A DNA stretch of 63,831 nucleotides, counting the filler, from Octopus bimaculoides (lineage: Eukaryota), in the NCBI RefSeq assembly GCF_001194135.2. It is 6 parts of 6 records of this genome, joined end to end, with 100 filler letters (N's around TTAATTAATTAA, not from the genome) between each part and the next. Parts side by side here need not be neighbours in the genome. Positions count along the whole stretch, not along the records: positions 25,889 to 56,159 come from NC_068994.1; 5 more parts are not named here. One strand, written 5' to 3'. Within the stretch, counting starts at the first letter, position 1. Each line of letters starts with the position of its first letter. The notes beneath the pieces are model-generated. The model was given only the letters and a program-made list of their open reading frames with translations. It made no database searches and was not told where the DNA came from. The position numbers and the translations under genes are program-made. This document shows positions 29,939 to 55,719 of this stretch, in pieces.

Positions 29939-30057
29939 TGACTCACAAATCTACACCATCAACATACTGCCCTTGTCAAACTACTACAGCAGCAGTTACA
30001 CTGAAGCACCATGCAATAATGTCTTCTGTAAGAAGCACAAAGGATTAAACAATGTAG
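29939..30057 (+). promoter_or_regulatory. Putative promoter/non-coding leader exon of PCDH gene A
   Basis: Begins TGACTCAC, shares the core CTACTACAGCAGCAGTTACACTG, ends AG|GTAAGT; homologues at 38959, 46586 and 55593. The 5' boundary is not determinable. Confidence 0.65.
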
Positions 30058-33000
30058 GTAAGTCATATTACTTTGCAATTTCTCATTTGATATTTTGTTC
30101 ATATTTTAGGATATTGAAGCATGAGAAATAGATACTAATATATTTAATAATAATATATTCAAGCAAGGAAATAGGAAACCATGGAATTATGTAGCCATTA
30201 CCAAAAGCTATTGCTATTGAAGTAGGATAGTTACTTTGTAAAAGTAAATATATTTAACAGTTATCATTATGCAAATACTAGACTGTCAGTTAACTGTATT
30301 TTACTTTATATTTTTCATACATATTACTATAATTCTTTAAAATTATTATTTCAAGTATTTCTATAAATCAGTTCAAATAGGCAATATTTATTAACCTTTG
30401 AGAATGTCTTATTTCCTTCTATTTAAATAGAATATTGAATCAAATGCATATGAAAATATGCATGGACTGCTAATTTCAAAGTATATAATTTCATTTTAGC
30501 ATTAAGTTTCTCTGTGAACAAATTCAGTCTTTGTTTTGATTCCTTATTGCAAGTTTTTATTATTAATTTTACAAATAACCTCAAGAATGACATTCATGCT
30601 TAAAACTAAAAATATTATTCAGTTATTTCTTTTATTCTTAATTACAAATTATATATTTTTTAAACTTATTTTGATATCTTTTAATATTTATTCTTATCAA
30701 GAAAACAGAATCAATTATATAAACATCTGTATCACTGTAAATATATATAATTAAAATAACTATATATAAATGAAAATATATGTTCATACACTCGGCAAAT
30801 CATTGCACTTCATTCTACAAAGACAAGCATCACCAGATATTTTAATTTATAATATTTTCAATCACTTATTTTGGCCACTTACATAAGCAAATTCAAAATT
30901 CTATATTTTCAAGTGTAGTGAAGTAAAAATCGTAATTTGCAGTAAATGCATGTTATTTTTACTCCCATTTTTAATAAATAATGATGATAAGCAAATATAA
31001 CTAAGAATTCTTTATATATATATATATATATATATAAAGGATTTCAAAATTATCCCTAATTACAAATTATTTCTATATTATTATTACTACTTTATCAAGA
31101 TTGGAAGAGTTTGATCAGGAAACATGAAGATACCTATTGTAAAATATCTGAACACCATTTTTCTTGTTTGTGTAAATAATTCTACTAATATCAGAGTCTT
31201 CTGAATAATGTTTTCAACTTACATAGAAAAACAATCACAATCATAACTAAAACACCATAAACACACATACCACAAATATTCAGTCAAATATAAGTAAAAG
31301 AAATAAGATTATTTTTCCAGCAATTTATGACAGCCATTTCTTGTGGCAAACTCAATCAATTCCACAAAATTAGAAATTTACTTGTTATGTAGATTTTACT
31401 TTTGTACATGCTTCATAATGCTACCAACTGTACAAAAATTCAAACATACTCCGAAATCTATTTTTATTTCAGACAGTCTGTATAATATAGCATGATATCA
31501 CAACAGACGGCAGTTTAGCATGTCTGGGCATTTAAACATGCAGTCTTCCTTTAGTTGATTGACTACATTTTTGTTAAATGTCTTCTCAAGCAAAACTGAT
31601 CAGAACTAGTCAAAAATAACAATCATAAAACTAAGGATATAGGTTTATATTTTATATGATCTCATTAATAGAAATTAAAGGAAAAGTTAATTTATCATTT
31701 AACACCAGAATTTTTATAAGGATTAAAATAGTTATTCCTCATCATTTTCGTAATTTTATATCTATCTTTCCATGTAGGCATGGGTTGAAGAAGTCTCATT
31801 ACTCATCTCACTCTCGTAATCTATCACACACAGTAACAAAGAAAATTTCCCAGTTTTATGCATGTCTTGCAGTGTGAACTGGATGTATTGGTTGTCACCA
31901 GAACTAGAATGGTTGTTCAATGCTAAAGGGCTAAAATTCTCTATTTTGTATCAGATTTTATTTGGCGCTACTGTGCTCCTGGAAGGAAAATCTATTAACA
32001 GAAATCAGTCAGTTGCCACTATAATATAACTTAATCAATCAGATTACAAGTCTATAATACAGAGCCACATTAGTTAGAAGTCAAGTGAAATATTTCAATA
32101 AAATGTACAATTGGCGATATATATTTCTTCCAAGAACACTATGCATCGACGGACTTGTACGATAAAATATAAGATTGAGAGGGGGAACAACTCTGTTATC
32201 TTAAAAGCTTTAATAAAAATATATTAACTGCCATTATTTTAAAAAGATTGATAACCAACTCAATAGGGTATCTTCCCACGGGTTGAGAGCTTCAAAGTTG
32301 TTTTTCTTCATGATTTCTGTCATATGAACAATATAATAAAAGGGAAATGAAATAAGTTGATGATTAATATAAGATAATGAAAAATACATTTTGCATAGTT
32401 TTAATCTGAATACAGGTACAGGTAACATTCTTAGAGAAAAAAACGAAAACTGAGCGCTATGTTGGAATCAATTCAAGTTGTTTCAGGTTTCTTCTTCATA
32501 CAATTTCCTCTGCCTTGAAATTTAGCATTTCGAATGTTAGATTAAGTATATTACTAAGAGGTTGGCACATTTGAGAGACCAAATGACTGCATAGATTATT
32601 TCACTTTGAATATGAAAACAAAACAATATTTACCTTGCACCATAGCTTTTAATCTTGTATGATGGTATTTTTCCACCTACACCAGTTGCCCCATTGGGCT
32701 GCTGCTGCCAACTTTGATGCTGGGGCAATGAAGGTTACCTTTTTCTTCCATGCTTCATTTGAATGAAATATGAACATTTCACTAACATACACATATATAA
32801 CTTGCATATGTATGTCTTATTGGATGGCTAATGACTTATCTAAGTTCACCAGCTCTTTGATAAGTTTTGTTTTGCTTCCTGCAACTTATCCAAAATCACC
32901 CTTCACACCATGCAAGTTTGGCAGAATTACCAGCCTTGTAGCCAACAACCTAATTATGCAACAGGTTGGACTGAGTTAGATATTACAAGATGCACTCACA

Positions 33001-33580
33001 AGTGACCTAACATCAAATTCCATTTAACAGCTAAGTATAAAAAACAGATGTAATGATATTGTTTGAAAAAATAATGTGTTATTTTTACATTATTTACAAT
33101 ATGTAATTCATTAATTGCAATCTTAGGAATAAGTTCATACTGAGAAAACTTTATGTCATAAAAGCAAATAGCACAGTTTATGTGTTAAGATCTCTTGTCA
33201 CGTCTAATTTTGGATATAGAGGCAATGCATTCTTGGTCTAATCACTTCATATGAGTGAAGATCTAATTTTATCTATTATGGATTTTAATTTTTTTTATAA
33301 TTATGGAATACACTTCTATGTTTTACCAAGTATGAATTTGACTTCACTCGAACAGCTGGTCACAGGCATATATGAAACTTGTACTATCAAGATATTACTT
33401 CATTATTTCATAATGTTACTAATATTTCAGAATATTATTGATTATATTACATGATAAATTTCACACACTTGATTTTGACATATATATTTTCTCTATATTA
33501 AAATTTCTGTATATGACTGTTTGATTCAATCAGCTTGTTTTATTTTCTTTTTAGATTTAGAGATATATTCATGAATAATA

Positions 33581-36068
33581 ATGAACTACAATAATGAGAT
33601 GACAAGCAACACTTTGCAGTTTTACCTTATCTATGGACTAATGTATTCTGTCATGTCCATAGACTACATTTACCATGTCAATGAAGAAGACAGTCCACAC
33701 ACATACATTGGAGATATTGCAGCTGACTCTAACCTATCAAATCCTCTTACACATCAACAGCTCACTCTCATTACATTTACACAACTACAAAGGACAGTTG
33801 AGAGTGGTTCTCATTTATTTAATGTCACCAACTTAGGAAAACTATACACTACTCAAACACTGGATGCTGAAAAACTTTGTATTTACAAGAAAGAATGCTC
33901 TAGAACTGTTAAAGTAGCAGTAAGGAAAGAAGAAACATTTCTAAAGATATTAAACATTAAAATAATTATAGAAGATATTAATGATCATCAACCAGAGTTC
34001 CCATCAAACAAGCTAAAAATCAAATTTTATGAAACAGATGGGAAAGGATCAACAAAATCAATACCAAATGCTGTTGATAAAGATATTAGTCTTCCAAATT
34101 CTGATATTATATATAAACTCAAAGATAACACCAAAAAATTCTCACTTTCCATATTTAAAGAATCTGATGGAATAAATGTACTAGAAATAACACTTGAAGA
34201 AAAATTAGATAGAGAATTACAAGACGCATATATGTTACAGTTAATTGCTAGAGATGCAGGTTCTCCACCAAAAGAAAGTATTCTGGACATTGAAATATCA
34301 ATTATTGATGTCAATGATAACAGACCTACATTTACACAAAAATTATATAATACCACCATCAGTGATACACATCATATGTCTTCTCCTGTCTTTGTTTTAT
34401 CAGCAACAGATTTAGATTCTGGTCAAAATGGAAATATTAATTACTTTTTACATAGAAATACAAAAGAATATGTTAAAAAACATTTTAAATTAAATCATAA
34501 AACAGGAGAAATTTTCGCCAATGATAATTTCTTCAGAAATAAAGGAAGTAAATATCAATTATATGTTGAAGCTAGGGATGGTGGAAATCCTTCATTAAGC
34601 TCCATGACAATGTTGATTATTAATGTTATTAGCAATCAAAATAATGTTCCATCAATAAATATAGATTTTGTATCACCTTTAACAGAGACTTCTACTGCTA
34701 TTTCAGAAGCAAGTAAAATTGGAAGTTTTATAGCTTATGTTATGGTAATTGATACTGATAGTGGACCCAATGGACAAATTAAATGTAATATTCATCATAA
34801 AATGTTCCAGCTTTCTAATATGGGTTCTAAAGAATATAAAATATTGGTGAAAGAACCTCTTGACAGAGAAACTATAGATCATTATGTTGTTTCTATTGTA
34901 TGTCATGACATGGGATCACCTCCATTAAAAACTAAGAAACAGTTTGCTGTCAAAGTAACTGATGTCAATGATGTAGAACCACATTTTACCAAAGAGACAT
35001 TCCAATTCCTCACCTATGAAAACCAGAAAGTTGACTTCCCTATTGGCTTCATCAATGCTACAGACCCAGATCTTGGAGATGGAGGCCAACTTACATATTC
35101 TCTCATCAATGATAACAACAATCATAACATTCCTTTCCAACTGACAAAATATGGATTTATTTCTACATCACAACCAATAGATCGAGAAATGAAAGACATC
35201 TATAATTTACATGTTTTAGTCAAAGATAATGGGATGCCTTCTTTGAATAACACTGCCAACATTCTTATAGAAATTTTAGATAAAAATGATAATGCTCCAT
35301 ATTTTATANNNNNNNNNNNNNNNNNNNNNNNNNNNNNNNNNNNNNNNNNNNNNNNNNNNNNNNNNNNNNNNNNNNNNNNNNNNNNNNNNNNNNNNNNNNN
35401 NNNNNNNNNNNNNNNNNNNNNNNNNNNNNNNNNNNNNNNNNNNNNNNNNNNNNNNNNNNNNNNNNNNNNNNNNNNNNNNNNNNGCTTTCCTCACATATGG
35501 AATACTGAGATCCAATGATAAAAACCTGTTTACAGTGAACTCACACACTGGTGTGTTATCTTTCTCTCGCACAGTTTACCAAAATGATGCAGGAACATAT
35601 GAACTGGAGTTTATAGTGAAAGATGGTGGTACTCCAGTTCAAACAGCAACAACTTCTATCATACTAACACTGTTTGTTAGTAATGATACATCTCCAATGT
35701 TGACTGCTATCCACTCACAGTCTGATAACAACCTGGATATGACTTGGATAATTATCATTGTAGCAGCAGCTGTAATACTATCTGTGGCTATTGTAGTGTC
35801 AATAACACTGTGTGTTTTCAGATGTATTAATCACATTAATAATTCACAAACAACAAAAAATAATCCAAAATTTCTGTCAAGAACTGAAATGAGACAAATA
35901 TTGTATCAGACTAACAATCCTGTTGCAATAACAAGAAATGCAGATGACATATTTAACAGAAATCTTCAGTCAATAAATCAGAAAAGTCCTTACTACCCTG
36001 AAATGGAAGAAACAGTTGGTGAATGGAAATTCTCAACAACACCCAGGAGATTACCACCCACACCACAG
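33581..36068 (+). CDS. PCDH: Protocadherin gene A, large exon: signal peptide, EC1-EC6, TM, proximal tail
   Basis: Cadherin motifs DINDHQPEF, LDRE, DVNDNRPTF, DVNDVEPHF, DKNDNAPYF; EC1 C-X5-C (CIYKKEC); TM WIIIIVAAAVILSVAIVVSITLCVF; acceptor TTTTAG at 33554; donor CAG|GTACC after 36068. Gap 35309-35483 explains the apparent frame change. Start could be the Met at 33599. Confidence 0.95.
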
Positions 36069-36356
36069 GTACCTAAACAATAACTTTTGTAAATATGTTT
36101 TTTGTTTTTTTTGGCTTAATCGTTGTTATTTATTTAGTTGTTTCAGATCTTTGCTTTAATATCATTACCTTATGATTTAATAGTTCTTTCTCATTTTGGC
36201 ACAAGGTTAGTAATTTTCAACAGAAGATGAATTCAGCTACATCAACCTCAGTACTCAACTGGTACTTATTTCATGAACCTCAAAATGATGAAAAGGAGAA
36301 TTGACCTCAGTGACATTTGAGCAAGAACTTCATACTTTTCAGAATTTTATTTCTTA

Positions 36357-37557: not shown

Positions 37558-37705
37558 ATCTATAATAAGCAGGTTTCAGATGGATCTGGTGAGCAAAATG
37601 ACACCAGCAGCATTGTGACATCAAACAACCTAAGTGATACATTACCATCTCAAAGAGATCACAGCCGTGGATGGAGTGAAGGGGATATTACACATCAGAT
37701 ATCAG
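37558..37705 (+). CDS. PCDH: PCDH gene A cytoplasmic exon 2
   Basis: ATGACAG acceptor, 148 nt, IYNKQVSDGSGEQNDTSSIVTSNNLSDTLPSQRDHSRGWSEGDITHQIS, phase 0 to 1, G|GTAACT donor. Confidence 0.9.
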
Positions 37706-38053: not shown

Positions 38054-38142
38054 AATATGGTAACTACACACCAAACATACCACCAATACCAAAGGGTGAA
38101 CATGAACAAGACACATATCTTGAACCAGTATACAAGAAATAG
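38054..38142 (+). CDS. PCDH: PCDH gene A terminal exon
   Basis: TTCCAG acceptor, EYGNYTPNIPPIPKGEHEQDTYLEPVYKK*. Confidence 0.9.
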
Positions 38143-38958: not shown

Positions 38959-39084
38959 TGACTCACAGTCTTCACCATTAAGATACTTCCATTGTCACCC
39001 TACTATAGCAGCAGTTATACAGGAACACTACGGAAGAATAGATGTCTTCTGAAAGAGGCACAAACAAAGGATTGAATAATGTTG
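38959..39084 (+). promoter_or_regulatory. Putative promoter/leader exon of PCDH gene B
   Basis: TGACTCAC...CTACTATAGCAGCAGTTATACAGGAACACTAC...GATGTCTTCT...AAAGGATTG...TG|GTAAGT. Confidence 0.65.
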
Positions 39085-39502
39085 GTAAGTCACTCTATAT
39101 TGTAATTTTATTCTAAATACTTTGGTAATCTATGCTTGAATTCTAAGATTTGACAATTATATAACAGATAATGTTTCTCATGATATATACAGAGATTCAA
39201 AACTAGAGATATATACAAAGATTTACCCATTTCCTAGAGCTATTTCTGCAGCAATTTCTATATACTTTACAGCACATATTTATTAATAGCTACAATCATA
39301 CAAATATTCATTTGTCAAATATTTACTTATATATTTTCATATACATTGTTATAATTTATATATAATCTAACATAATTTTTCTATAAATTGCTTTCAGCAA
39401 GGAATATTGATTGTCTATTGGTAATGTCTAATTTCACTCCATCTAAGTAATGTATTAAATATCTAAATATATATGTATGTATGCATATATATATAAATAT
39501 AC

Positions 39503-39548
<46 letters not shown>

Positions 39549-39959
39549 ATAATATAATATAATATGATATAATATGAATTCATTCAGTACTAAATTTTTC
39601 AGTGGACTGATTCAAAATTTCAGATATATTTTGTTGTTGCAATTTTTTCATTTGTTTTTCCAAGACCATCATATAATAACTTCCAATGTTACCTTTTATT
39701 ATTCATTTTTCTCTGTAGTTAATTAATTGATTATATCAAGATACAAACACACACACATACACACAAGTACACCAACAATTAGCAAGAGTACGGCAACAAA
39801 TTTAATGTGGAGGTCGGAGTTCACTAGAGCTCAGCTTTCAGTCCCCTCCTATTTATCATAGTCCTCTAGGTCACGCCAGAGGAGTTTAAAACCAGTTGCC
39901 CTCTGTTCTGATCACCTGAATTTGTAGTAGAATTAAAAAAGAAATTCATAGTGTTTGTA

Positions 39960-40790
39960 TGAAGAAAAGCATGGAATGGAAGGGTCTTACAGCTAATAAA
40001 GCTAATTTAACAAAGATCAAAGTTCAAGTAAGCAGGGAAACAGATAGAACACTGGTCCTTTTTGTAAAATGGCCCTGTCTGATACATAGAAAAAGTTTTA
40101 GGTGTACCCAGTGAATACTATGGAAACTTAAGAGGTAACAGAATCATGGAGTCACATGAAGATTAAGCCAGATAGTTGACTTTGTGGAAGATGTGCAGAA
40201 GCAATAAGAACACAAGGGAAATAGATTTTCTTTAGTACCCAGGAGGATCTCTAGAGGAAGTAGACAACTGCTGTTGCCTTGGCGACCTTATTAGGAGTGG
40301 GGGTGCTCTGAATGAATGGTTGCTAAAATAAGAACCAGCAGGAGAATGTTATGAAAGGTGTTGGCAACAAAAGGCTTCTTCCTCTGAGTGAAAGCAGATT
40401 CTATGATACTCGTGTATGAACAGTAATGCTACATAGTTGGCCATAAAAGCAGAGGAAATGTGAAAACTAAGAAGAAATGAAACTAGCACACTTCTCTGGA
40501 TATGTGTACATATGACAAAATGCAAAGTTTGTAAGAGATATCAGATGTAGTGAACAAGACTGCACTGGCATAGTCATATGATGCATATGGATAAGGATGG
40601 CTGCATAAAGAAGTGTCAATCACTAAATGTAGATAGAATCTGCAGAAGTGAGAGACCCAGGAAGACTTGGAATGAAGTAGTAAAGATTGACCTGAGGTTG
40701 TTCAGCCTCATAAATGAAGTGACAAAGGTCTAAGAGGATTGGTGATTCACTGTGCTTGAGAAGACATACCCATCTCAGCAAAAATGAGGT
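39960..40790 (+). mobile_element. Old RTE-like LINE 3' portion in the leader intron of gene B
   Basis: Degenerate C-terminal-type segment around AGACCCAGGAAGACTTGGAATGAAGT (RPRKTW-like) ending TGTGCTTGAGAAGAC; no intact ORF; CpG-poor. Confidence 0.6.
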
Positions 40791-41832
40791 TCTAAAAGCA
40801 AAATGTTCATGTCTGTGTTCCTGTACCCAATCTGTGCCTCACCTCTCAAGCTTTCTCCACAAATCTTCCTAAGAACTATCTCTCCAAAAACTAAAGCTCT
40901 ATTTTTTTTACTCAACTGCTGAGGCTCCATTGTCAGCTTTGGAAAGGTTTCTATGGCTAGAAGCTTTTCTTAGTGCCAACCTCTTTACAGTGTGGACTGG
41001 GTGCATTTTTCAGAAGGTTGGAGGATCATAGACCAGAAGGTTGGAGGATGATGTGCAAGATGTAGGAGTAACAGAGAGAGAGATTTGAGAGAACATTAGG
41101 ATGACTATAGTGAGTGAGGGATAATAGCATATATGTGAGGGTGCTGAGAATGCTAGCATATATATGAGGTGTTTCGATGGAGTGTGGCAGAGAAGTGCAA
41201 TTATAATGCAAATCATGGTTTCTTAAATAAAAATGTGAGTGGAAAACATTACAGGCTAGTCACTTCAATGAAAGTACTTTGATAATGCCATTGCACAAAT
41301 ACTGATGCAAACAATGGGGAAGGAGTGACATGTACTAATTTTACTCTCATGTAATTATAACCATCAAATAGTGCCATAGACAGAGAAATGATGGAGGGCT
41401 GGGTAGTGGGGGAATTAAGTGTTCAGAAATGCATGATGAGGCAAAATGGGTTAGAAGTTTACCTCATTGTGCATTTCTCCTTATACATATGCATACATAC
41501 ATACATACATACATACATACATACATACATACATACATACGTGTATGTATGTATGTACATTTCATATACATGCATCATACATCCCATCATTCACTCCAAG
41601 AGAGAGATTCACTATTGCCAGCAGAGGTAGTATTTTACTGATCTTATTCCACTTTGTTCAGTTTTTGCTTACAATGACAATATCAGAAGTTTTTTTAAGC
41701 AATTTCCCAAACTGCAAATTTCATTTATCAAATTTAAATGTTTACATATGTTAATATAATTAAATCAACAAGGATTTCTTTTTTTTTTTAGGTTTAAATA
41801 CACAATTTGTACATGAATAATAATGAATTACA

Positions 41833-44227
41833 ATGATGATAATAATCAAAATTCTACAGTTTTACATCATCTGTGGATTGATGTACTCTGTTGTAATGGT
41901 AGATATTACATACCATGTCAATGAAGAAGACAGTCCTCACACCTATATAGGAGATATTGCAATTGATTCCAACTTAACAACACACTCATTCACACATCAG
42001 CAACACACTCTCATTACTTTTACACAATTACAACGATCAGTTGCAAGTGGATCTAACTTATTTAATATCACCAACTTGGGAAAACTTTACACTACGCAGA
42101 CATTAGACGCTGAATCACTTTGTACATATAAGAAGGAATGTTTCAAAGTAGTTAAAGTAGCAGTAAGGAAAGCAGAAACATTTATAAAGATATTGAAGAT
42201 AAAAATAATTATAGAAGATATTAATGATCATCAACCAGAGTTTCCATCAAACCAATTAAAAGTCAAATTTTATGAAACAGAAGGGAAAGGATCAACAAAG
42301 TCAATACCAAATGCTGTTGATAAAGACATTGGTCTTCTTAATTCTAACATCACATATAAACTGATAGATAAAAGTAAAAAATTTTCGCTACTTACATTTA
42401 AAGGATTTGATGGGGTAACTATACTAGAAATAACACTTGGAGAAAAATTAGACAGAGAATTTAAAAACATTTATACATTACAGTTGGTGGCTAAGGATGG
42501 AGGTTTTCCACCAAAAGAAGGAATTCTGAACATAGAAATACATGTTATAGATGTCAATGATAATCAACCACTTTTTAAACAAAAATCGTATAATACTACC
42601 ATCAGTGATACACATCACATATCTTCCCCTGTGTTTCATATATCAGCTACAGATTTAGACTCTGGTCAAAATGGAAATATTACTTACTATTTACATAGAA
42701 ATACAAATAAACATACCAAAAATAAGTTTAAATTAAATTCTAAAAGTGGAGAAATCTTCATCAATGATAATTTCTTTAGAAATACAGAAAGTAAATATCA
42801 GTTATACATTGAAGCTAGGGATGGTGGAAATCCTTCATTAAGCTCCATGGCAATGTTGATTATTAATGTTATTAGCAATCAAAATAATGTTCCATCTATA
42901 AATATAGATTTTGTATCTCCTCTAACAAAGTCTTCTACTGCTATTTCAGAAGCAAGTAAAATTGGGAGTTTTATTGCTTATGTTATGGTAATTGATACTG
43001 ATAGTGGACCCAATGGACAAATTAAATGTAATATTCACCATAAAATGTTCCAGCTTTCTAATATGGGTTCTAAAGAATATAAAATATTGGTTAAAGAACC
43101 TCTTGACAGAGAAACTATAGATCATTATGTTGTTTCTATTGTATGTCATGACATGGGATCACCTCCATTAAAGACTAAGAAACAGTTCTCTGTCAAAGTA
43201 ACTGATGTCAATGATGTAGAACCACATTTTACCAAAGAGACATTCCAATTCCTCACCTATGAAAACCAGAAAGTTGACTTCCCTATTNNNNNNNNNNNNN
43301 NNNNNNNNNNNNNNNNNNNNNNNNNNNNNNNNNNNNNNNNNNNNNNNNNNNNNNNNNNNNNNNNNNNNNNNNNNNNNNNNNNNNNNNNNNNNNNNNNNNN
43401 NNNNNNNNNNNNNNNNNNNNNNNNNNNNNNNNNNNNNNNNNNNNNNNNNNNNNNNNNNNNNNNNNNNNNNNNNNNNNNNNNNNNNNNNNNNNNNNNNNNN
43501 NNNNNNNNNNNNNNNNNNNNNNNNNNNNNNNNNNNNNNNNNNNNNNNNNNNNNNNNNNNNNNNNNNNNNNNNNNNNNNNNNNNNNNNNNNNNNNNNNNNN
43601 NNNNNNNNNNNNNNNNNNNNNNNNNNNNNNNNNNNNNNNNNNNNNNNNNNNNNNNNNNNNNNNNNNNNNNNNNNNNNNNNNNNNNNNNNNNNNNNNNNNN
43701 NNNNNNNNNNNNNNNNNNNNNNNNNNNNNNNNNNNNACCAAAATGATGCAGGAACATATGAACTGGAGTTTATAGTGAAAGATGGTGGTACACCAGTTCA
43801 ATCAGCAACAACTGCTATCATACTAACACTGTTTGTTAGTAATGATACATCTCCAATGTTGACTGCTATCCACTCACAGTCTGATAACAACCTGAATATG
43901 ACTTGGATAATTATCATTGTAGCAGCAGCTGTAATACTATCTGTAGCTATTGTAGTGTCCATAACACTGTGTGTTTTCAGATGTATTAATCATTTCAATA
44001 ATTCATCTGCAGAAAAAAATAATCCAAAATTTCTGTCAAGGACTGAAATGAGACAAATATTGTATCAGACTAACAATCCTGTTGCAATAACTCGGAATGC
44101 AGAGGAGATATTTAGCAGAAATCTTCAGTCAATAAACCCCAAAAGTCCATATTATCCAGAGATGGAACAATCAGCCAATGAATGGAAATTCTCAACAACA
44201 CCTAGGAGACTTCCACCAGTTCCACAG
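41833..44227 (+). CDS. PCDH: Protocadherin gene B, large exon
   Basis: Same domain order as gene A; acceptor T-run+AG at 41791; donor CAG|GTATG after 44227; gap 43288-43736 hides most of EC5 and part of EC6. Confidence 0.95.
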
Positions 44228-45159: not shown

Positions 45160-45307
45160 ATGTACAATAAGCAAGTTTTGGATGATTCATGTGAACAAAG
45201 TGACAGCAGCAATATTGTGACATCAAACAACCTTAGTGACACATTGCCATCTCAAAAAGATTGCAACCGTGGATGGAGTGAAGGAGATATTACATATCAG
45301 ACATCAG
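45160..45307 (+). CDS. PCDH: PCDH gene B cytoplasmic exon 2
   Basis: TTGACAG acceptor, 148 nt, MYNKQVLDDSCEQSDSSNIVTSNNLSDTLPSQKDCNRGWSEGDITYQTS, G|GTAATT donor. Confidence 0.9.
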
Positions 45308-45744: not shown

Positions 45745-45824
45745 AATACAGTAACTACAAACCAAACATACCTCCCACAGCAAAAAGTGGACATGAACAA
45801 GATACATATCTAGCACCAGTGTAA
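45745..45824 (+). CDS. PCDH: PCDH gene B terminal exon
   Basis: TTCCAG acceptor, EYSNYKPNIPPTAKSGHEQDTYLAPV*. Confidence 0.9.
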
Positions 45825-46585: not shown

Positions 46586-46698
46586 TGACTCACGAATCTG
46601 CACTAACAAGATGCTACTATAGCAGCAGTTATACTGGAACACTACGCAAGAACAGATGTCTTCTAAAAGAAGCACAAACAAAGGATTAAGTAATGAAG
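46586..46698 (+). promoter_or_regulatory. Putative promoter/leader exon of PCDH gene C
   Basis: TGACTCAC...CTACTATAGCAGCAGTTATACTGGAACACTAC...GATGTCTTCT...AAAGGATTAAG...AG|GTAAGT. Confidence 0.65.
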
Positions 46699-49672
46699 GT
46701 AAGTTACTTTATAGTTCATACTCACAATTAATATTTTCATAGTATATATTTGATAGTCAGGTATAATAACCTGATAAAATCTAGAATGTCTGTTATGAGA
46801 ATTATATACAGAAACTTGCTATTAATTATTACATTAGCAAAAACAATTACTGCAGCCATTTATTTAATGAGGCCAGTTACTGCAGTATATTCACTTCAAT
46901 GAAAGTACTTCCAGCAGTGCCATTGCCCAAATACTGATTAGAAAATTGATGTTTGTTTACTTATCCCATGTTATTTATAAAATCATTTTGTAAATTTGAC
47001 AGCTGAAATTTTTTTTATTAATTTCCACAAATGTTGGTAATTAAGCACAGAAATGTCAGTCAATTTATATTCGGTGGCTAGTAAAAAATTTAGATATACA
47101 ATAGTACATGTTCATTTAAGTCTCAGATTTTTCTGTGAGAAGAATCTATTATTTCTTCCTTTCTTCTTCATTAATGCAGTTATTTCATTTGTAATCAATT
47201 TCTCTAAAGATATTAATGTCTCAGTTCCCTGTTACTATTCACTATAACTTGGCGAGGAGGGATTCTTGACTGATATAGAAATTATCATTATGCATATCTA
47301 TAATGATACAAACTTAAATATCTAAATATCACTATATCACTATAAATATTTTGTTAAAATACAATATAAATCAATTACTTTCACAAAAATTATTCTTCTC
47401 TAGGTAAAAAAAAACCTATATAGATGATTAAACTGAGATAATTATATTATTACGGAGATGTACTTGCATAGCAAGTGACTTGATCTGAGATTGTAGCATG
47501 GAAATTTGTCAGTGAACAGGTCGCAGTTCAAAGTGATGAAAATATTTTGACAAATTAAATTTAAATGTTGAAGTGAATCGAACAGTTTTTTTGCATTTTT
47601 AAATGGCTTATAAACACCTTCTACACTGCAATTATATTATTGCTGTTAGTTTATTCTCCTTTAAAAACGTTGATTTAGTCCAGTGACACAAAATTATAAG
47701 CTGTAAAGCATTTAGTCTATTTTTGTATTACACAGGCAAATGTTAGCAACCAAGGATTCTTAATAATTTGCCATTTGTACTGTGTATTGACAATATATCT
47801 TCACTCTACATGTAAAAACCAATATCATTAGACTTCTAATCATATTTCAAGTACTCAATATCCCAGCATTTAAAGGAAATATAGTAACTACCACAGTAGT
47901 TCCTAAACAGTTCCTTAAATCAAAAAGAAAGTATGCCAGTCCAACATAAGTCCCTCCACCCACCCAATTTGTCTTCATATTCCACCCCAAAAAAGTAAAC
48001 TCTTACAAAACCTGCACTATATGCTTTGTGGTTCATCATAGGATGCACACATACTGTGCATTGAAGATTTGTTCAACAGAACAACCACATTATGTAAAGG
48101 TATTTCAATTTCAGCAAACAATGACAATAATACTGAGTTGTATTAGTTAAATCACCTCAAATATTTCAGTATAAAGTACAAATAGATGGAAGTGTTAGGA
48201 AATATACAGAGATAACAAGGGAAATAACTCTGGGGTTTTCAAACGTTGCACCTAATTTATACAGATAGGACACCTGTTTTTCCACAGCTCATGTTTCAGT
48301 AAACACTTGAATTTCTTACAACCCACCAGACGAATACATTGGGTGACCACTATTGATGTTTGGAGTCATTTGAATTCGTATGAATATCTAAATATTGTTG
48401 ATTGCGAATTTCTGTCAATTTGGGGCACTTCCTAGGGTATTTTGCTTACACCTATCCTTTGTTATTGCTTCCAAGTGTCAGTGGTGGGGCAAAGTATTGA
48501 TGTGGATAAGATAGAAGTGATGAGAGAATAAGACCATGATTTTTTAGCTTGAGATGTATGATATTAGTTAATCAGCTGCATATAATGTGAGAAAGAAAGG
48601 AAGAAAAAATAATGCAATTCTTTACAGAAAGTGTTTCTCAGAAATAAATGAATATTCAGGCCAATGATATGAATCTGCATTGCTTCTAAAGTTTCTGTAC
48701 CCATATCAATTGGATGCATGGTGTTTGGCAAATCTAGTTTCAACCTCAGTAGTGATGAGTGCTACAATAACTACTATCTTGCATGTCCTAAATTTCAAGA
48801 CAATAAACATATTAAACAGAGTAGGTGTATTCTTGAAAGAAATTTGCTTATGCACAGCATGTAAAATGACTACCTATAAGCACTCTCACAGGCAACCTGT
48901 GAAATATATTTGTATGAAACAAGTTAATAAAGTCAACTTGTAACATTATTTCAGTAGTTACAATCGAATTGTACAATTCTTAGGCAATAATTGAACTCCC
49001 TCAATGGCAATTTGAAAATTAGCAATGTTTTATGTTTTGTTGAAAATCTGTGCAGCAGCAATTTCTTGAGTGAAAAAAGTTGATTGCACCACCATATAAC
49101 ATAAGCAACAAATGAAGTTTCTTTGCTGAGTTTATTCAGTTTTTTATCATTCTAGCCTCCAATGTGGCCATACTGGCATCTCATTGTCAATTAAATCTCT
49201 CTCATGTAACAACCCTATTATGTAGTGCTTGTTTTCTCTTTGATGAATGTCTAATATTTTTGCAAAATACAGCAGTCTAAAAAATACTATTTCTATTGAA
49301 AACATAAATAACATAGATTCATAAGACATGGAAATTCAATTTGGGCAGCCAGTTATTAAGTTTTGTGAGTTATGTTATGATTTAAACTATTGGCAAAATG
49401 TTAAGAATGAAATCTAAACGCTAGGAAGAAGTCTTGTGAAAAAAAATCTGTTGAGTCGTTACTCCTTTTGTTTTAAGTTTTACCTGAATTTTACCTATTT
49501 TACCTTGTTAAAAATTTATCAAAATTCATACATATGGTGATAACTGAAATATGACAAGCTTTTAAGTAACATCAATACTTAAATGTAAATTTCAACAAAA
49601 ATTCTATGATTAAGTTCAATGTTTTCTTCTTTCATTTAAGTCATATGGATTCAAGAACAATGAAATAAAACA

Positions 49673-51903
49673 ATGATTGGAAATAATATTTTACAATTTT
49701 ACATTTTGCATGTTTGGATAAAAGCAGTCATAGCTGTAGATATTTCATACTATATCAATGAAGAAGAGAGCCCTCACACCTATATAGGAGACATTGCTAT
49801 TGACTCCAACTTATCACACCCTCTCACACATCAACAACACACTCTCATTACATTTACACAACTACAAAGGACAGTCGAGAGTGGTTCTCACTTATTTAAT
49901 GTCACCAACTCAGGAAAACTATACACTACTCAAACACTGGATGCTGAAACTCTATGTACATACAACAGGGAATGTTCTAGGATTCTTAAGGTTGCAGTGA
50001 GGAAAGCAGAAACGTTCATAAAAATATTAAAGATAAANNNNNNNNNNGAAGAAACGTTCATAAAAATATTAAAGATAAAAATATTAATAGAAGATATCAA
50101 TGACCATTCACCAGAATTTCAAGATGATCAAATAAAAATACAATTTGATGAAACAGATGGGAAAGGATCAACAAAATCAATACCAAATGCTGTGGATAAA
50201 GACATTGGCCTTCTTAATTCTAAGATTACATATAAACTCAAAGATAAAAGTAAGAAATTCTCACTATCCATATTTAAAGGGTTTGATGGAATAAATTTAC
50301 TTAAAATAACCCTAGAAGGAATGTTAGATAGGGAATTAAAAGACACTTATATGTTACTGTTGATAGCTAAAGACAGTGGCACTCCACAAAAAGAAGGTTC
50401 TTTGAAGATAGAAGTCTCAGTTACAGATGCCAATGATAACCAACCAATGTTTACTCAGAAATCATATAATATTTCCATCAGTGATACACATCACAAATCT
50501 TCTCCTGTTTTTGTTTTATCAGCTACAGATTTAGATTCTGGTCAAAATGGGAATGTTACTTACTATTTACATAGAAATACAAATAAATATGCCAGAAAAC
50601 ATTTCAAATTGAAGAGCAAATCTGGAGAAATTTTCCTTAATAATAATTTCTTAAGTAATAAAGAAAGTAAATACCAACTATACATTGAAGCCCGTGATGG
50701 TGGAAAACCATCTTTAAGTTCTACAACAATATTAATTATTAATATAATTAACAATCAAAATAATGTTCCAACAATAAATATAGATTTTGTATCTCCTCTA
50801 ACAAAGTCTTCTACTGCTATTTCAGAAGCAAGTAAAATTGGTAGTTTTATAGCTTATGTTATGGTCACTGACACTGACAGTGGACCTAATGGACAAACTA
50901 AATGTAATATTCATCATAAAATGTTCCAACTTTCTAATATGGGTTCTAAAGAATATAAAATACTGGTCAAAGAACCTCTTGACAGAGAAGCTATAGATAA
51001 TTATGTTGTTTCTATTGTATGTCATGACATGGGATCACCTCCATTAAAGACTAAGAAACAGTTCTCTGTCAAAATAACTGATGTCAATGATGTAGAACCA
51101 CATTTTACCAAAGAGACATTCCAATTCCTCACCTATGAAAACCAGAANNNNNNNNNNNNNNNNNNNNNNNNNNNNNNNNNNNNNNNNNNNNNNNNNNNNN
51201 NNNNNNNNNNNNNNNNNNNNNNNNNNNNNNNNNNNNNNNNNNNNNNNNNNNNNNNNNNNNNNNNNNNNNNNNNNNNNNNNNNNNNNNNNNNNNNNNNNNN
51301 NNNNNNNNNNNNNNNNNNNNNNNNNNNNNNNNNNNNNNNNNNNNNNNNNNNNNNNNNNNNNNNNNNNNNNNNNNNNNNNNNNNNNNNNNNNNNNNNNNNN
51401 NNNNNNNNNNNNNNNNNNNNNNNNNNNNNNNNNNNNNNNNNNNNNNNNNNNNNNNNNNNNNNNNNNNNNNNNNNNNNNNNNNNNNNNNNNNNNNNNNNNN
51501 NNNNNNNNNNNNNNNNNATGATACATCTCCAATGTTGACTGCTATCCACTCAAAGTCTGGTAACAACCTGAATTTGACTTGGATAATTATCATTGTAGCA
51601 GCAGCTGTAATACTATCTGTGGCTATTGTAGTGTCAATAACACTATGTGTATTCAAATGTATTAATCACATTAATAATTCACAAACAACAAAAAGTAATC
51701 CAAAATTTCTGTCAAGGACTGAAATGAGACAAATATTGTATCAGACTAATAATCCTGTAGCAATAACTCAGAATGCAGAAGAGATATTTAACAGAAATCT
51801 TCAGTCCATAAACCCCAAAAGCCCATATTATCCAGAGATGGAACAATCAGCCAATGAATGGAAATTCTCAACAACACCCAGAAGATTACCATCAATTCCT
51901 CAG
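49673..51903 (+). CDS. PCDH: Protocadherin gene C, large exon
   Basis: Same domain order; acceptor TTTAAG at 49640; donor CAG|GTAAGT after 51903; gaps 50038-50047 (with duplicated flanks) and 51148-51517. Confidence 0.93.
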
Positions 51904-53808
51904 GTAAGTATCATCATCTATAAACAACTATAAATATATTTATAATTCAAAATTAACACATTATAAGCACATAATTAAACTATTAACAGAAAGCCTTTTC
52001 CTTGATATGAATACTGAAGATTGTGTTTTGCATTGTAAATTTTTTTGATTGAGATGAATAAATACTCTTAATGATTTTTAGTTAAATTTCTTGGAATGGG
52101 CAAATGAGGCTGCTTTATTTAACATGATTATGATCATTCAATTTCTTTCGATGGTTTACATAGGATAGAGCATCCACTCAGATTCTAAACTGACTTACCT
52201 AATGCAGTGTTTCATTGATTTCCTGTAAAGCAAGCACCATTTTATTTTGAGAGCAGAAAAGTTATTGCAACTAGTATATGAGCACATAAGCAGACATCTC
52301 CCATAAATGTTCAATACCACAGTGTCTAGTAACAAAAAAGATATAATGACAGCCTATTAGCATACTGATTTAGGTTCCATGGATCACTTATGAAGGGTAA
52401 TTAATTCATTAAATAAATAACATTCCTAGTAATGCAGTCAAGATGCCAATCTTAGAAGGCAACATGAATTCTAGACAGGAGAATGGCAATCTGAGCCAGA
52501 ATAATTTATGTGAGTCTTACTGTCTAAGTAAAAATAATAAATCAGTCCTTGTCATATATTTTGCAATATATTTTAGAATGTGAAACTTAAAATGGATTAT
52601 GACAGTAAGTCTTAGAACTCAAAGTAGGGGATTTACTTTCAGGGATAGATTTTAGAAGTCACTCTCACAAAATACTAACTATTTATATCACAAGAGTTTT
52701 GATCTGCTAGATATCTGGAGATATAAGTTTATATTTTCTTGTAAATGGTTTGTGCAGCAATTTATATGCTGGCTGCTCCATTCAATGACACTTTCCAGAG
52801 CTTTAAAAAAGAAAATGAAGCACATTTGTGTATTTTTCTGACCATATTTACTTGAATGCAGAACTAGTGAAGAAGTCAGAATGCATTTTAGTATAATGTT
52901 TTAGTTTAAACTGACAAGATTGATTAAAAGAAAGTAACAGGACTTGCTGAAAGACACAATGCACTGCCTGATCCAAGAATCAAAACCATATCCTAACAAT
53001 AGTGAGCCCAACACTCTAACCACTAAGTTACATACCCCTGTGGTTCATCTTTATTCTCTTAAGATAAACATAATTATCACATCATTTAAATCCAATATCT
53101 TAGCTCTTAATATCGGTAGCTCTTCTTCAATATACATTTTCCATTTATGAAATATCTTATGTGTTTCCTTCAATAGGTAGTGTGATGATATCTAATATAC
53201 CCAAAATATAAAAATTAGTTATTTGAAAGAACTATATAACACTGATCAACAAGGTCCCAACTTAAAGTAATCTTTTCAGTGCACATCTTAAAACTCACTG
53301 TCAATTGTTACCTTTCATGAAAATTTTATATTTTACCTAAACAACATCAATAAATTGACTATATTTTATGATACAAGCATTATCTTAACCTTGACCTTTT
53401 ACTCAACAAGTCCCAAGTGTACCTTGCAACTAATAACTCTCATAGCTGTGGTGACACACAAATTTGCTTTGTTAGGAAACAAATTTAACAAACAAAAATA
53501 TTTTCATATAATCAACAAAATCTTCCTAATTGAAAATGATAACTTTCATTTAAATCACATTGTTGTTTCATCCTACCCTCTTTTTTGAGTATTCCAACTG
53601 CACTTCACCTATTTTAAATCCCTATTTACATTTCCTATTTACATTTCAGCTATAATGAAATCTGTTATATTTGATAAATATATTTTGATAAAAGTAATAC
53701 TGTTTTTTTTCTCTTTAGTAATACGCTTAATATTTCAACTGCATGTAGTCATCAATGAAAACATTATGTTAGAAAATGTTTACCATTTATCTTTTTTTTT
53801 TTTGTCAG

Positions 53809-53968
53809 AATTATAATAAAGATATGGTAGAGGACCAAGCTGAACAAAAATGTTATAATGATAGTATTATCACAGCAAACAACTTGAATGACACTCTCCC
53901 CTCACATAAGGAACAGAACCATGGGTGGAGTGATGGCGACATTACACATCAAGTATCTGGTATATCAG
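53809..53968 (+). CDS. PCDH: PCDH gene C cytoplasmic exon 2
   Basis: T-run+GTCAG acceptor, 160 nt, NYNKDMVEDQAEQKCYNDSIITANNLNDTLPSHKEQNHGWSDGDITHQVSGIS, phase 0 to 1. Confidence 0.85.
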
Positions 53969-54287
53969 GTAATTATAAAAATAATTCAAAATATTCTTAT
54001 GAAAATATTTTTAAAAAAACTTTAAACTGAATTGAATGATAAAAAAATACTTTATTACAATAGATACAATAGTTTTTTTGTTATTGTTTTGTAACAAATA
54101 ACATACTGTGAAATTATTATAAAGCATACAAATCTTTACAAAACTATTAAACAAATCCAATCAGAAAATAAACATATTTCCAAGTTCATTACAAACAAAT
54201 CCTATCAGTGGATCAATTTCTTTATTTCCTCTTTCAAATTGATGCTTACATTGTCTAATATCACTTTAATATTTATATATTTTACAG

Positions 54288-54367
54288 AATACAGCAACTA
54301 TCACCCAAATATACCTCCAACACCAAAATGTAAACAAGAACAAGAAACCTATTTAGAGCCTGTATGA
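54288..54367 (+). CDS. PCDH: PCDH gene C terminal exon
   Basis: TTTACAG acceptor, EYSNYHPNIPPTPKCKQEQETYLEPV*. Confidence 0.88.
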
Positions 54368-55592
54368 TGTACATTGTATTTACTTTACACTCATAACAAT
54401 AAATAATACTTCCTTCTCAGAACACATAGAACAAACCAACAAATAATTTAGTATTTCATTGAAAATATTTAAATGTATTCATAATTATTAGATATATATT
54501 TATTATGATATTTGTATAGCTTTCGGAAATTTACGTAGAAGTCATAAAACAGATGTTAGTTTTATTGAAGCCTTTGCAGCATTGATAAAAATGAATATTA
54601 GTATATCTTTCACACTGATTACCATTTTCATTTTAAGAATTTATATTTTCTACAAGCAATCAAACAGAGATGTCTTTAAGGAACAAAATACATCATAACC
54701 TAGTTTCACTTTCTAGTTATAACCATCTTTCTTAAAAAATATCACTAAAGCTCATTTCTCTTTCTCTAGCCAAATCCTCAAATTTTATGCAGCTATATTT
54801 AGAGAGAATTACCACTGGTCTCAAACAGTAATGACATCAAAAGAGAAAGGACTAATTACACATGCAGTAGCATTAAAAATCCTTCTCACTTTTCACCACC
54901 CCACTAATCTCTCCCTCTTCTCCTCTCCCTTTCTCTGTAACATTGCAATGCCATATAACCAAGTATTTTTTTTTTTTTTGCAACAACTAAAACTTAAACA
55001 AAATTATTTAAGATTTGAAATTATTATTTCATTTCAGAAATTCTTATAAAGATTTTTGATGATGAAAATAAACTATTTTTAATAGTAAAATAGTGATTCC
55101 TAACATAGACACACAGTTTCAAATTTGGTGGGAGGGATATAGATGATTANNNNNNNNNNAACATAGACACACAGTTTCAAATTTGGTGGGAGGGATATAG
55201 ATGATTAAATCAACCCTAGACTTGACAGGTATATGCATGATGAAAGAGAAATCAACTTTAGTAGGATTTGAACTTAAAAAGAAAAAAAACTGTAAGTAAA
55301 TGCTGCAAGGCATTTTATCGAACATACTAATAATTCTTCAAAGCCATTGCCACCACCCTCAACAAAGTATTAAGAATGAATAATATAAATTCGTTATATG
55401 ATTTTAATTTCATAACATTTCCTGCTCAATAGGTTTTCTTATCAGAAGTGACACATTTTCAATATTAAATTTTACTTTCTTACACGCAATGTGGAGGAAT
55501 AAACTCATACAAACAAAGAAAACACACAGCTATGGATATGCTTAAACACATACAACCACAATTCTCATCTAAGAGTTCTACTTCCTATCATC

Positions 55593-55719
55593 TGACTCAC
55601 AACAGCAGTTCATCAACATACAACTGTTATTGTGCTACTACTACAATAGTTACTCTGGAACACTACAAGATGCATGACTGTAGTTTCATGTCATGGGAAC
55701 AATGGATTAAACAATGAAG
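55593..55719 (+). promoter_or_regulatory. Putative leader exon of a further PCDH gene whose body is not assembled here
   Basis: TGACTCAC...CTACTACTACAATAGTTACTCTGGAACACTAC...GGATTAAACAATGAAG|GTAAGA; the block ends about 440 bp later at a gap. Confidence 0.55.

What the first reader, a model, noticed from the sequence alone, without database searches (positions are those of the whole stretch)
29939..55719. Repeated promoter/leader module with invariant TGACTCAC (AP-1-like) upstream of each protocadherin
Seen: four homologous blocks of about 120 bp (29939-30057, 38959-39084, 46586-46698, 55593-55719). The first three lie 2.7-3.5 kb upstream of a large PCDH exon; the fourth precedes the terminal gap. 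All keep TGACTCAC at the 5' edge, a CTACTA..AGCAGTTA.AC.GGAACACTAC-type core and a G|GTAAG donor 112-126 nt downstream, while nearby intergenic DNA does not visibly align. No reading frame is conserved (indels, stops) and no acceptor AG is shared, which fits a first, non-coding exon. Matching acceptors precede the ATGs (33554, 41791, 49640). Established: TGA(C/G)TCA is the Fos/Jun bZIP site, and vertebrate clustered Pcdh promoters share a conserved element (CSE, CTCF-bound) used in promoter choice. Inference: a convergent, independently built per-gene promoter system, possibly activity-regulated through AP-1, for this cephalopod PCDH array.
Basis: partly seen in the sequence, partly recalled or inferred. 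Interest (0 to 1): 0.72.

Follow-up and report, generated by a model that had tools for sequence, protein, structure and literature searches.

The report
Shared promoter-leader exon of octopus protocadherins
Each protocadherin gene in this Octopus bimaculoides tandem array has its own conserved non-coding first exon and promoter region, headed by an unchanging TGACTCAC motif; this is ordinary gene anatomy copied by tandem duplication, but the motif looks like a real, untested regulatory site.

Summary
The piece is an Octopus bimaculoides protocadherin (PCDH) array of head-to-tail genes. Each gene runs leader block, 2.7-3.5 kb intron, large exon, then two small cytoplasmic exons. They are the only strongly conserved non-coding island in each unit. 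TGACTCA occurs four times in the piece, always at a block's 5' edge.

Homologous blocks lie upstream of orthologous and paralogous genes in O. vulgaris, O. sinensis and Argonauta hians: 19 sites in 289 kb, all on the coding strand. TGACTCAC is exact in 15 of them and is the only invariant run longer than 2 bases.

Two public gene models splice the leader donor to the large-exon acceptor, though as read-through fusions.

The non-coding first exon plus promoter reading is well supported. The AP-1 reading rests only on a sequence match. The motif could instead mark the transcription start.

The module was inherited by duplication within one sub-array. It is not a family-wide or independently built system, and it has no CTCF/CSE-like element. 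No assembly gap touches the blocks. Interest is modest.

The parts
29939..29946 (+). TGACTCAC motif of gene 1 (TRE/AP-1-like heptamer plus an invariant C)
   Evidence: locate it. It is invariant across the 13-copy alignment.
29939..30057 (+). Leader block 1: inferred non-coding exon 1 of PCDH gene 1, donor TAG|GTAAGT. The true 5' end (transcription start) is unmapped.
30058..33554 (+). Intron 1 of gene 1 (3497 nt), with no assembly gap
   Evidence: The orthologous intron is used in the O. vulgaris model CAI9733468.1.
33555..36068 (+). Large exon of gene 1: 26 nt of 5'UTR, ATG at 33581, cadherin repeats and transmembrane segment, donor CACAG|gtacct. It is interrupted by the gap at 35309-35483.
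37558..37705 (+). Exon A of gene 1 (cytoplasmic, 148 nt, ends in phase 1)
38054..38142 (+). Exon B of gene 1 (C-terminus and stop codon). It lies 817 nt upstream of the next TGACTCAC.
38959..39084 (+). Leader block 2, with TGACTCAC at 38959-38966 and donor TTG|GTAAGT
39085..41791 (+). Intron 1 of gene 2 (2707 nt), with no assembly gap
41792..44227 (+). Large exon of gene 2 (ATG at 41833), interrupted by the gap at 43288-43736
45160..45307 (+). Exon A of gene 2
45745..45824 (+). Exon B of gene 2 (stop codon). It lies 762 nt upstream of the next TGACTCAC.
46586..46698 (+). Leader block 3, with TGACTCAC at 46586-46593 and donor AAG|GTAAGT. It has a 14-nt deletion relative to blocks 1 and 2.
46699..49640 (+). 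Intron 1 of gene 3 (2942 nt), with no assembly gap
49641..51903 (+). Large exon of gene 3 (ATG at 49673). It contains the artefactual 10-N gap at 50038-50047 and the gap at 51148-51517.
53809..53968 (+). Exon A of gene 3
54288..54367 (+). Exon B of gene 3 (stop codon)
55593..55719 (+). Leader block 4, with TGACTCAC at 55593-55600 and donor AAG|GTAAGA. It belongs to a fourth gene whose large exon lies beyond the end of the piece. Its O. vulgaris orthologue (L013 6499) sits 3.35 kb upstream of the large exon of P0005.
28034..28595 (+). Exons A and B (28034-28181, 28507-28595) of the preceding gene, whose large exon lies upstream of the piece

Best explanation
**What it is**
- Each block is the proximal promoter plus non-coding first exon of one protocadherin gene.
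- Whole gene units were copied head-to-tail. A unit is promoter and leader exon, intron, large exon, exon A and exon B.
- Purifying selection has kept the leader module while the surrounding intergenic and intronic DNA decayed.

**How it most likely works**
- Transcription starts at or shortly upstream or downstream of TGACTCAC.
- The roughly 115-125 nt leader is spliced from its G|GTAAGT donor to the acceptor 26-41 nt before the start codon. This gives a 5'UTR of about 145-170 nt that carries several short upstream ORFs.
- TGACTCAC is a sequence-specific protein-binding site in the promoter, most likely for a bZIP factor of the AP-1 (Jun/Fos) type.

**Shown versus inferred**
- Shown: the gene anatomy, the splice signals, the lack of coding potential and the conservation.
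- Inferred: the position of the transcription start and the identity of the factor that binds.

**Sub-confidences**
- Non-coding first exon plus promoter: about 0.85.
- TGACTCAC is a functional DNA element: about 0.8.
- It is bound by AP-1-type bZIP proteins: about 0.4.
For: **Gene anatomy**
- The anatomy is fixed by protein A0A0L8I0Z9 (100% identical) and by the splice signals.
- Strong donors and pyrimidine-rich acceptors are present in all 11 units examined across four species.
- There is no conserved frame and several early-terminating upstream ATGs.

**Conservation**
- The leader is the single identity peak between the previous stop codon and the large exon.
- A leader profile finds 19 sites in 289 kb. 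All are on the coding strand, all lie between PCDH genes, and there are none elsewhere.
- Octopus and Argonauta DNA align only at the exons and at the leader region.
- TGACTCAC is exact in 15 of 19 sites. It is the only invariant run longer than 2 columns among the 130 exon columns, 18 of which are invariant.
- The most decayed motif copy (L013 17088) belongs to a unit with no large exon.

**Composition and annotation**
- The leader is 37-40% GC, against 26-30% in its surroundings.
- CAI9733468.1 ends ...NGLNNV|DFEVYP*. That junction joins the leader donor to the large-exon acceptor.
- XP_036365291.1 contains leader-derived peptides between PCDH units.

**Motif match and context**
- The heptamer and its 3' C fit the Jun/Fos preference RTGA(C/G)TCAY. 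This is from my own knowledge of the TRE consensus.
- Octopus PCDH mRNAs rise with environmental enrichment (PMC7465212). This is compatible with activity-linked control but not specific to it.
Against: **No direct transcript evidence**
- No transcript 5' end or junction read could be obtained.
- The Logan contigs retrieved were genomic or unspliced.
- Both supporting gene models are read-through fusions with odd or non-canonical upstream junctions. They may be partly ab initio.

**The motif is not universal**
- One intact O. sinensis gene has TGGCTAAC in place of the motif. A neighbouring leader, whose gene lies beyond the locus, has TGACTGAC.
- An O. vulgaris leader (L013 21464) has TGATTCAC, with no large exon in the 4.2 kb that follow it within the locus.

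**The AP-1 assignment is weak**
- AP-1 sites usually act in enhancers or upstream promoter regions. A position at the very 5' edge of the conserved block fits an initiator equally well.
- The invariant eighth base and the strict orientation are not explained by a palindromic bZIP site.
Confidence: 0.65

Rival explanations
1. The exon and promoter are as in the best explanation, but TGACTCAC is the initiator region rather than a bZIP site. Transcription would start at the A of CTCA(+1)C, positioned by a weak TATA-like box about 30 bp upstream.
For: - CTCAC(A/T) fits the BBCA(+1)BW initiator consensus in most copies. This comparison is from my own knowledge of that consensus.
- A T(T/C)TA(A/G)(A/G) element lies 25 nt before the motif in about 10 of 13 copies, which places the A of TCAC about 31 nt downstream of it.
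- Strong conservation begins at the motif.
- The motif has a fixed orientation, which a palindromic bZIP site does not require.
Against: - Initiators are degenerate, so 8 invariant bases across 15 copies and four species is more than an initiator normally shows.
- The TATA-like element is missing in two Argonauta copies and is poor in others.
- The cephalopod core-promoter grammar is unknown.
Confidence: 0.2
2. The block is an internal 'bridge' exon of read-through transcripts that run from one PCDH gene into the next. Its 5' part (cTGAC, then a G-poor stretch, then CAG) would be a branch point and 3' splice region. The real promoter would lie elsewhere.
For: - CAI9733468.1 and XP_036365291.1 both enter the leader from exon B of the upstream gene. 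They use AGs inside the block, such as CTACTATAG|CAGCAG.
- One AG in the core is invariant.
- A CTGAC/ATGAC resembles the yUnAy branch-point consensus. This comparison is from my own knowledge.
Against: - No pyrimidine tract precedes the internal AGs, which sit in a purine-rich CAGCAG context.
- The positions of the first downstream AGs differ between copies, so no AG-free zone is conserved.
- The junction in CAI9733468.1 is non-canonical.
- No other conserved island that could serve as an upstream first exon exists in the 760-1340 nt after the previous stop codon.
- Fused models are a common annotation artefact in tandem arrays. This is my own judgement.
Confidence: 0.1
3. The similarity is a neutral leftover of recent duplication or gene conversion and has no function.
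For: Gene conversion clearly operates in this array. The EC5-EC6 part of the large exon is near-identical among paralogs, and Albertin et al. 2022 report homogenisation (PMC9068888).
Against: - The flanks of the same units have decayed to background identity while the block has not.
- The block is retained in Argonauta, where introns no longer align.
- Conservation within the block is patterned: the motif, the core and the donor stand out.
Confidence: 0.03
4. The block is a dispersed repeat or transposon fragment, a small structured RNA, or a short coding exon.
For: None was found beyond the fact that the block is repeated.
Against: - There is one copy per unit, always on the coding strand, with no hits elsewhere in 289 kb.
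- There is no Rfam family match.
- RNAalifold predicts no pairs.
- Reading frames differ between copies.
Confidence: 0.02

Closest known systems
Vertebrate clustered-protocadherin variable-exon promoters with the conserved sequence element (CSE, CGCT box, bound by CTCF)
   Same: - There is one promoter per large extracellular-domain exon in a head-to-tail array.
- Each promoter carries a short, highly conserved element in a fixed orientation and at a fixed position relative to the transcript start region (PMC7811963).
   Different: - There is no CGCT box or CTCF-like core within 300 bp of any block. The conserved element is a TRE-like TGACTCAC.
- The octopus promoter is separated from the large exon by a non-coding exon and a 0.6-5.6 kb intron. 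The vertebrate element lies about 200 bp upstream of the ATG.
- Each octopus gene has its own 3' exons rather than shared constant exons (PMC9068888).
- The module covers one sub-array only.
- Stochastic promoter choice and enhancer looping are untested.
TPA-response element (TRE), TGA(C/G)TCA, bound by Jun/Fos AP-1 dimers
   Same: The heptamer is an exact match with a favourable 3' pyrimidine, and it is conserved as a unit.
   Different: - Binding and inducibility are untested.
- The eighth base and the orientation are also fixed.
- The location is at the edge of the transcribed block rather than in a distal enhancer.
Ordinary non-coding first exons (5'UTR exons) retained among tandemly duplicated paralogs
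   Same: It has a donor, a matching acceptor just upstream of the ATG, no reading frame, and inheritance together with the gene unit.
   Different: - Sequence retention is unusually high for a UTR exon: 71-78% three-way identity, against 81-86% pairwise in the coding exon.
- There are several motif-like islands inside the exon.

Membership tests
Vertebrate Pcdh CSE / CTCF-bound promoter element | A conserved element of about 22 bp with a CGCT box and a CTCF core motif | tested here: not met
   There is no CGCT/AGCG and no loose CTCF core within ±300 bp of any of the four blocks. Each of those stretches has only 2-5 CpG.
Vertebrate Pcdh CSE / CTCF-bound promoter element | A position about 200 bp upstream of the start codon of the variable exon, with no intervening intron | tested here: not met
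   The motif lies 2.8-3.6 kb upstream of the ATG and is separated from it by an intron of 2707-3497 nt.
Vertebrate Pcdh CSE / CTCF-bound promoter element | One copy per large exon, all in the same orientation | tested here: met
   There are 19 sites in 289 kb, all on the coding strand, with one per unit.
Vertebrate Pcdh CSE / CTCF-bound promoter element | CTCF binding and enhancer looping that determine promoter choice | not testable with these tools
   This needs ChIP or CUT&Tag and Hi-C from octopus neurons.
AP-1 / TRE site | The heptamer TGA(C/G)TCA | tested here: met
   The match is exact in 4 of 4 window copies and in 15 of 19 sites overall. The other four sites have 1-3 mismatches.
AP-1 / TRE site | Binding by Jun/Fos dimers and stimulus-dependent activation | not testable with these tools
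   No binding or expression data are available here.
Non-coding first exon with adjoining promoter | A canonical 5' splice site at its end and a matching 3' splice site upstream of the start codon | tested here: met
   Donors are GTAAGT, GTAAGA or GTAAAT. Pyrimidine-rich AG acceptors lie 20-50 nt before the ATG in the units checked.
Non-coding first exon with adjoining promoter | No conserved open reading frame | tested here: met
   The frames that stay open across the junction differ between copies, and the upstream ATGs terminate early.
Non-coding first exon with adjoining promoter | No functional 3' splice site at its 5' side, and no upstream exon | tested here: inconclusive
   - There is no shared AG at the 5' edge and no other conserved island upstream.
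- However, two fused gene models enter the block at internal AGs.
Non-coding first exon with adjoining promoter | Transcript 5' ends at the block, and reads that join the block to the large exon | tested here: inconclusive
   - The only evidence is from annotation: the predicted intron is present in CAI9733468.1 and XP_036365291.1.
- No usable cDNA contig was found.
Dispersed repeat / transposable element | Many copies in both orientations, unlinked to a particular gene | tested here: not met
   Hits occur only at the expected position and strand in 289 kb from four species. The whole genome was not searchable.
Known structured RNA family | A match to an Rfam model, or a conserved secondary structure | tested here: not met
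   There were no Rfam matches at gathering score and RNAalifold predicted no pairs.

The most novel reading that the evidence does not exclude
The TGACTCAC-headed leader promoters form a dedicated control code for one octopod protocadherin sub-array. A bZIP (AP-1-type) factor would couple expression of individual genes to neuronal activity, or would take part in choosing which genes a neuron expresses. This would be functionally convergent with the vertebrate CSE/CTCF promoter-choice system, but built from a different motif and a separate leader exon. The read-through splicing into leader exons seen in gene models could be part of that mechanism.
Probability: 0.15. Interest if true: 0.75.

Novelty: new variant of a known kind. 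Interest (0 to 1): 0.4.

Why it matters
- Cephalopods expanded protocadherins independently of vertebrates. How individual genes in these arrays are switched on is unknown.
- I found no paper in the searchable library that describes their promoters or leader exons.
- This result gives a concrete, testable handle: a mapped candidate promoter and first exon for each gene of one sub-array, plus a single 8-bp element that has stayed unchanged across Octopus and Argonauta.
- It also corrects gene models, which currently start at the ATG or fuse neighbouring genes.
- If the motif proves to be AP-1-responsive or involved in gene choice, the comparison with vertebrate Pcdh regulation becomes experimentally tractable.
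- If not, this is ordinary promoter conservation in a young gene family.

Tried and rejected
1. **Direct transcript evidence through Logan assemblies.**
   - Contigs L004-L008 begin in an AT repeat and carry the intron and acceptor, so they are genomic or unspliced.
   - L003 is a GC-rich contig encoding a PCDH only 53% identical to gene 1, of unknown source species, and uninformative.
   - L012 is genomic DNA of another octopod and covers only the 3' half of intron 1.
   - A search with conceptual leader-junction peptides found no candidates.
   - The look-up for P0035 was not on record.
2. **Coding exon.** Rejected: the frames are not conserved.
3. **Structured RNA.** Rejected.
4. **General PCDH leader.**
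   - The profile does not hit the 10 kb upstream of two O. bimaculoides PCDH genes from about 53%-identity clades.
   - TGACTCA(C) occurrences there (L009 7306, L011 9606) and at L002 18564 have no leader features.
   - Comparing the two upstream regions with each other found only dispersed repeats.
5. **A second conserved intronic element (30300-30463 against 39322-39486).** The similarity is weak and AT-rich, at 52% across species, so I did not pursue it.
6. **CTCF/CSE-like element.** Absent.
7. **Literature on Fos/Jun in octopus.** The search returned nothing usable.


Full report
**Source and gene anatomy**

The piece (25889-56159) is Octopus bimaculoides DNA. The first large reading frame is 100% identical to UniProt A0A0L8I0Z9. 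Its closest relatives are 'protocadherin beta-15-like' proteins of O. vulgaris (93%), O. sinensis and Argonauta hians.

A self-comparison shows a tandem unit of about 8-9 kb with four conserved islands. Together with the protein models and the splice signals, these define head-to-tail genes. Each gene has five parts:
- a leader block;
- an intron of 2.7-3.5 kb;
- a large exon (33555-36068, 41792-44227, 49641-51903) with the ATG 26-41 nt inside it;
- exon A (37558-37705, 45160-45307, 53809-53968);
- exon B, which carries the stop codon (38054-38142, 45745-45824, 54288-54367).

Exons A and B at 28034-28595 belong to a gene whose large exon lies upstream of the piece. Leader 4 (55593-55719) belongs to a gene whose large exon lies beyond the piece's end. 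The next TGACTCAC follows the previous stop codon by only 762-1344 nt.

**Assembly gaps (tested first, as asked)**

- The three long N runs all fall inside the large exons, at the same relative place.
- Compared with O. vulgaris CAI9733468.1 they hide about 34, 154 and 195 residues.
- The frames on the two sides differ as written, which only reflects the arbitrary gap lengths.
- The missing stretch is the EC5-EC6 region, which is near-identical among paralogs and species. The gaps are therefore best explained by collapse of a homogenised segment during assembly.
- The two 10-N gaps are flanked by exact 29-nt and 48-nt duplications, so they are unmerged overlapping contig ends.
- No gap touches a leader, a leader-to-large-exon intron or an acceptor.

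- TGACTCAC sits at 29939, 38959, 46586 and 55593. No other TGACTCA or TGAGTCA exists in the piece. Shuffles gave a mean of 0.77.
- The blocks end in TAG|GTAAGT, TTG|GTAAGT, AAG|GTAAGT and AAG|GTAAGA, 113-127 nt after the motif starts.
- A three-way alignment runs from the previous stop codon to the next ATG. It shows one sharp identity peak, 0.71-0.78 at 29932-30074, against a background of 0.30-0.45.
- The block is 37-40% GC, in surroundings of 26-30%.
- Two details need correcting. Flanks of blocks 1 and 2 do align for about 130 nt upstream. One AG inside the core is invariant.

**Comparative evidence**

I fetched loci around related genes: O. vulgaris (L001, L013), A. hians (L002, L014), O. 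sinensis (L010, L015) and two distant O. bimaculoides paralogs (L009, L011). A profile built from the leaders gave the following results.
- It finds 19 sites in 289 kb. Every site is on the coding strand, between a PCDH 3' end and the next large exon, and there are none elsewhere.
- Octopus and Argonauta DNA align only at the exons, at some repeats and at the leader region. The block is therefore under constraint and not merely young.
- In an alignment of 13 copies, 18 of the 130 exon columns are invariant. The only invariant run longer than two columns is the eight bases TGACTCAC.
- Other conserved islands are CAGCAGTTAC, GGAACAC, AAAGGATTAAAC just before the donor, and the donor itself.
- The motif is exact in 15 of 19 sites.
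- The four exceptions are TGATTCAC and TGACTGCA in O. vulgaris, and TGGCTAAC and TGACTGAC in an O. sinensis clade about 69% identical in protein.
- The TGACTGCA copy heads a unit that has lost its large exon.
- Distant PCDH clades (about 53% identity) have no detectable homologue of the block. Their large exons nevertheless also begin at an acceptor 55-70 nt before the ATG. A separate 5' exon therefore seems general to the family.

**Non-coding status and splicing**

- Spliced in silico, the leaders carry 4-5 upstream ATGs. Nearly all stop within 1-23 codons; one in gene 2 (at 41823) instead runs out of frame into the coding sequence. The frame that stays open across the junction differs between copies.
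- There is no Rfam match and no consensus RNA structure.
- Donors and pyrimidine-rich acceptors are present in all 11 units where both ends could be examined. Introns there range from 642 to about 5550 nt.

**Transcript support is indirect**

- The O. vulgaris model CAI9733468.1 ends ...PMPKNRKHNGLNNV|DFEVYP*. The last junction joins the leader donor to the large-exon acceptor, which is exactly the predicted intron. However, the model reaches the leader from exon B of the upstream gene through a non-canonical junction.
- The O. sinensis RefSeq model XP_036365291.1 (5090 residues) fuses six PCDH units. At two of its junctions it translates leader sequence entered at internal AGs.
- So two independent annotation pipelines treat the block as exon and use its donor. 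Both models are read-through fusions and may be partly ab initio.
- Attempts to obtain cDNA contigs failed.

**Mechanism**

The best-supported reading is a promoter plus non-coding first exon, copied with each gene by tandem duplication and kept by selection. This fits the published picture of cephalopod PCDH arrays as whole-gene duplicates with gene conversion and without shared constant exons (PMC9068888).

TGACTCAC is a functional DNA element. It matches the Jun/Fos TRE exactly, including a favourable 3' pyrimidine, so an AP-1-type bZIP site is the leading candidate. That assignment rests on a pattern match only.

The main rival is that the motif overlaps the initiator. CTCA(+1)C(A/T) fits an initiator consensus. 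In about 10 of 13 copies a weak TATA-like element lies 25 nt before the motif, which puts the A of TCAC about 31 nt downstream. The fixed orientation also suits this reading.

A second rival is an internal bridge exon of read-through transcripts. The fused models suggest it. Against it:
- there is no pyrimidine tract before the internal AGs;
- the positions of the first downstream AGs are not conserved;
- no conserved upstream exon exists.

**Comparison with known systems**

The module works like the vertebrate clustered-Pcdh variable-exon promoters, in having one promoter with a shared conserved element per large exon. It is not a member of that family, for three reasons:
- there is no CGCT box or CTCF-like core near any block;
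- the element is separated from the coding exon by an intron;
- each gene has its own 3' exons.

The phrase 'independently built per gene' is not apt. The blocks are homologous copies, and they are confined to one sub-array. I found no description of octopus PCDH promoters or leader exons in the searchable literature. One qPCR study reports PCDH up-regulation with enrichment (PMC7465212). That is compatible with activity-linked control but does not test it.

**Verdict**

- Novelty is modest: an undescribed promoter and leader module that is a variant of a known arrangement.
- Interest is about 0.4.
- The AP-1 or promoter-choice reading has a probability of about 0.15 and would be of considerably higher interest if shown.

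Noticed in passing
window 35309-35483, 43288-43736, 51148-51517: The three long assembly gaps fall at the same relative place in all three large exons. That place is the EC5-EC6 stretch (VEPHFTKETFQFLTYENQKVDFPIGFINATDPDLGDGGQLTYSIINDNNNDNIPFQLTKYGF...), which is near-identical among paralogs and even between species, while the N-terminal halves are only 65-85% identical. This points to gene conversion that collapsed the assembly.
   Followed up: partly
window 50038-50047 and 55150-55159: Both 10-N gaps are flanked by exact duplicated sequence of 29 nt and 48 nt. The contig ends overlap and the gaps are artefacts. The first one adds a false ETFIKILKI repeat to gene 3.
   Followed up: yes
L001 (O. 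vulgaris) and proteins P0003, P0124: Public gene models fuse neighbouring PCDH genes. XP_036365291.1 (5090 residues) chains six units. CAI9733468.1 runs from one gene's exon B into the next gene's leader and 5'UTR. These are either read-through transcripts or annotation artefacts.
   Followed up: partly
window 32887-32973: A 29-30 residue peptide of XP_036365291.1 (AYPKSPFTPCKFGGINSSVANNLIMKQVG) maps inside intron 1 of gene 1, about 600 nt before the acceptor. It is present only in this unit and its orthologues. It is probably a cryptic or ab initio exon.
   Followed up: no
window 41823-41835: In gene 2, the ATG homologous to gene 1's start codon (41823) is out of frame with the cadherin reading frame, which starts at 41833. 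The signal-peptide region has shifted, and an overlapping upstream ORF results.
   Followed up: no
L001 4198-4562, 18047-18410, 32014-32377: O. vulgaris carries three near-identical tandem copies (period about 13.9 kb) of the unit that is single in this O. bimaculoides piece. This is either a recent triplication or a collapse in the older assembly.
   Followed up: no
L013 17087-17185 and 20613-20768: A decayed unit: a leader with a degenerate motif (TGACTGCA) is followed by an exon-A-like remnant but no large exon.
   Followed up: partly
window 30040-30049, 39067-39076, 46681-46690, 55702-55711; L010 4140-4290: - AAAGGATTAAAC lies 8-12 nt before the donor and is kept even in copies that have lost TGACTCAC. 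It contains GGATTA, the reverse of TAATCC.
- The CAGCAGTTACAC.GGAACAC core is tandemly repeated in an O. sinensis leader and contains a CNGTTR pattern.
- The TAATCC and CNGTTR assignments are pattern matches from my own knowledge only.
   Followed up: no
window 26014-26209; 31006-31043; 39456-39570; 41506-41557: There is a dispersed repeat with copies in both orientations in the Argonauta locus. There are also palindromic AT-rich microsatellites in the introns.
   Followed up: no
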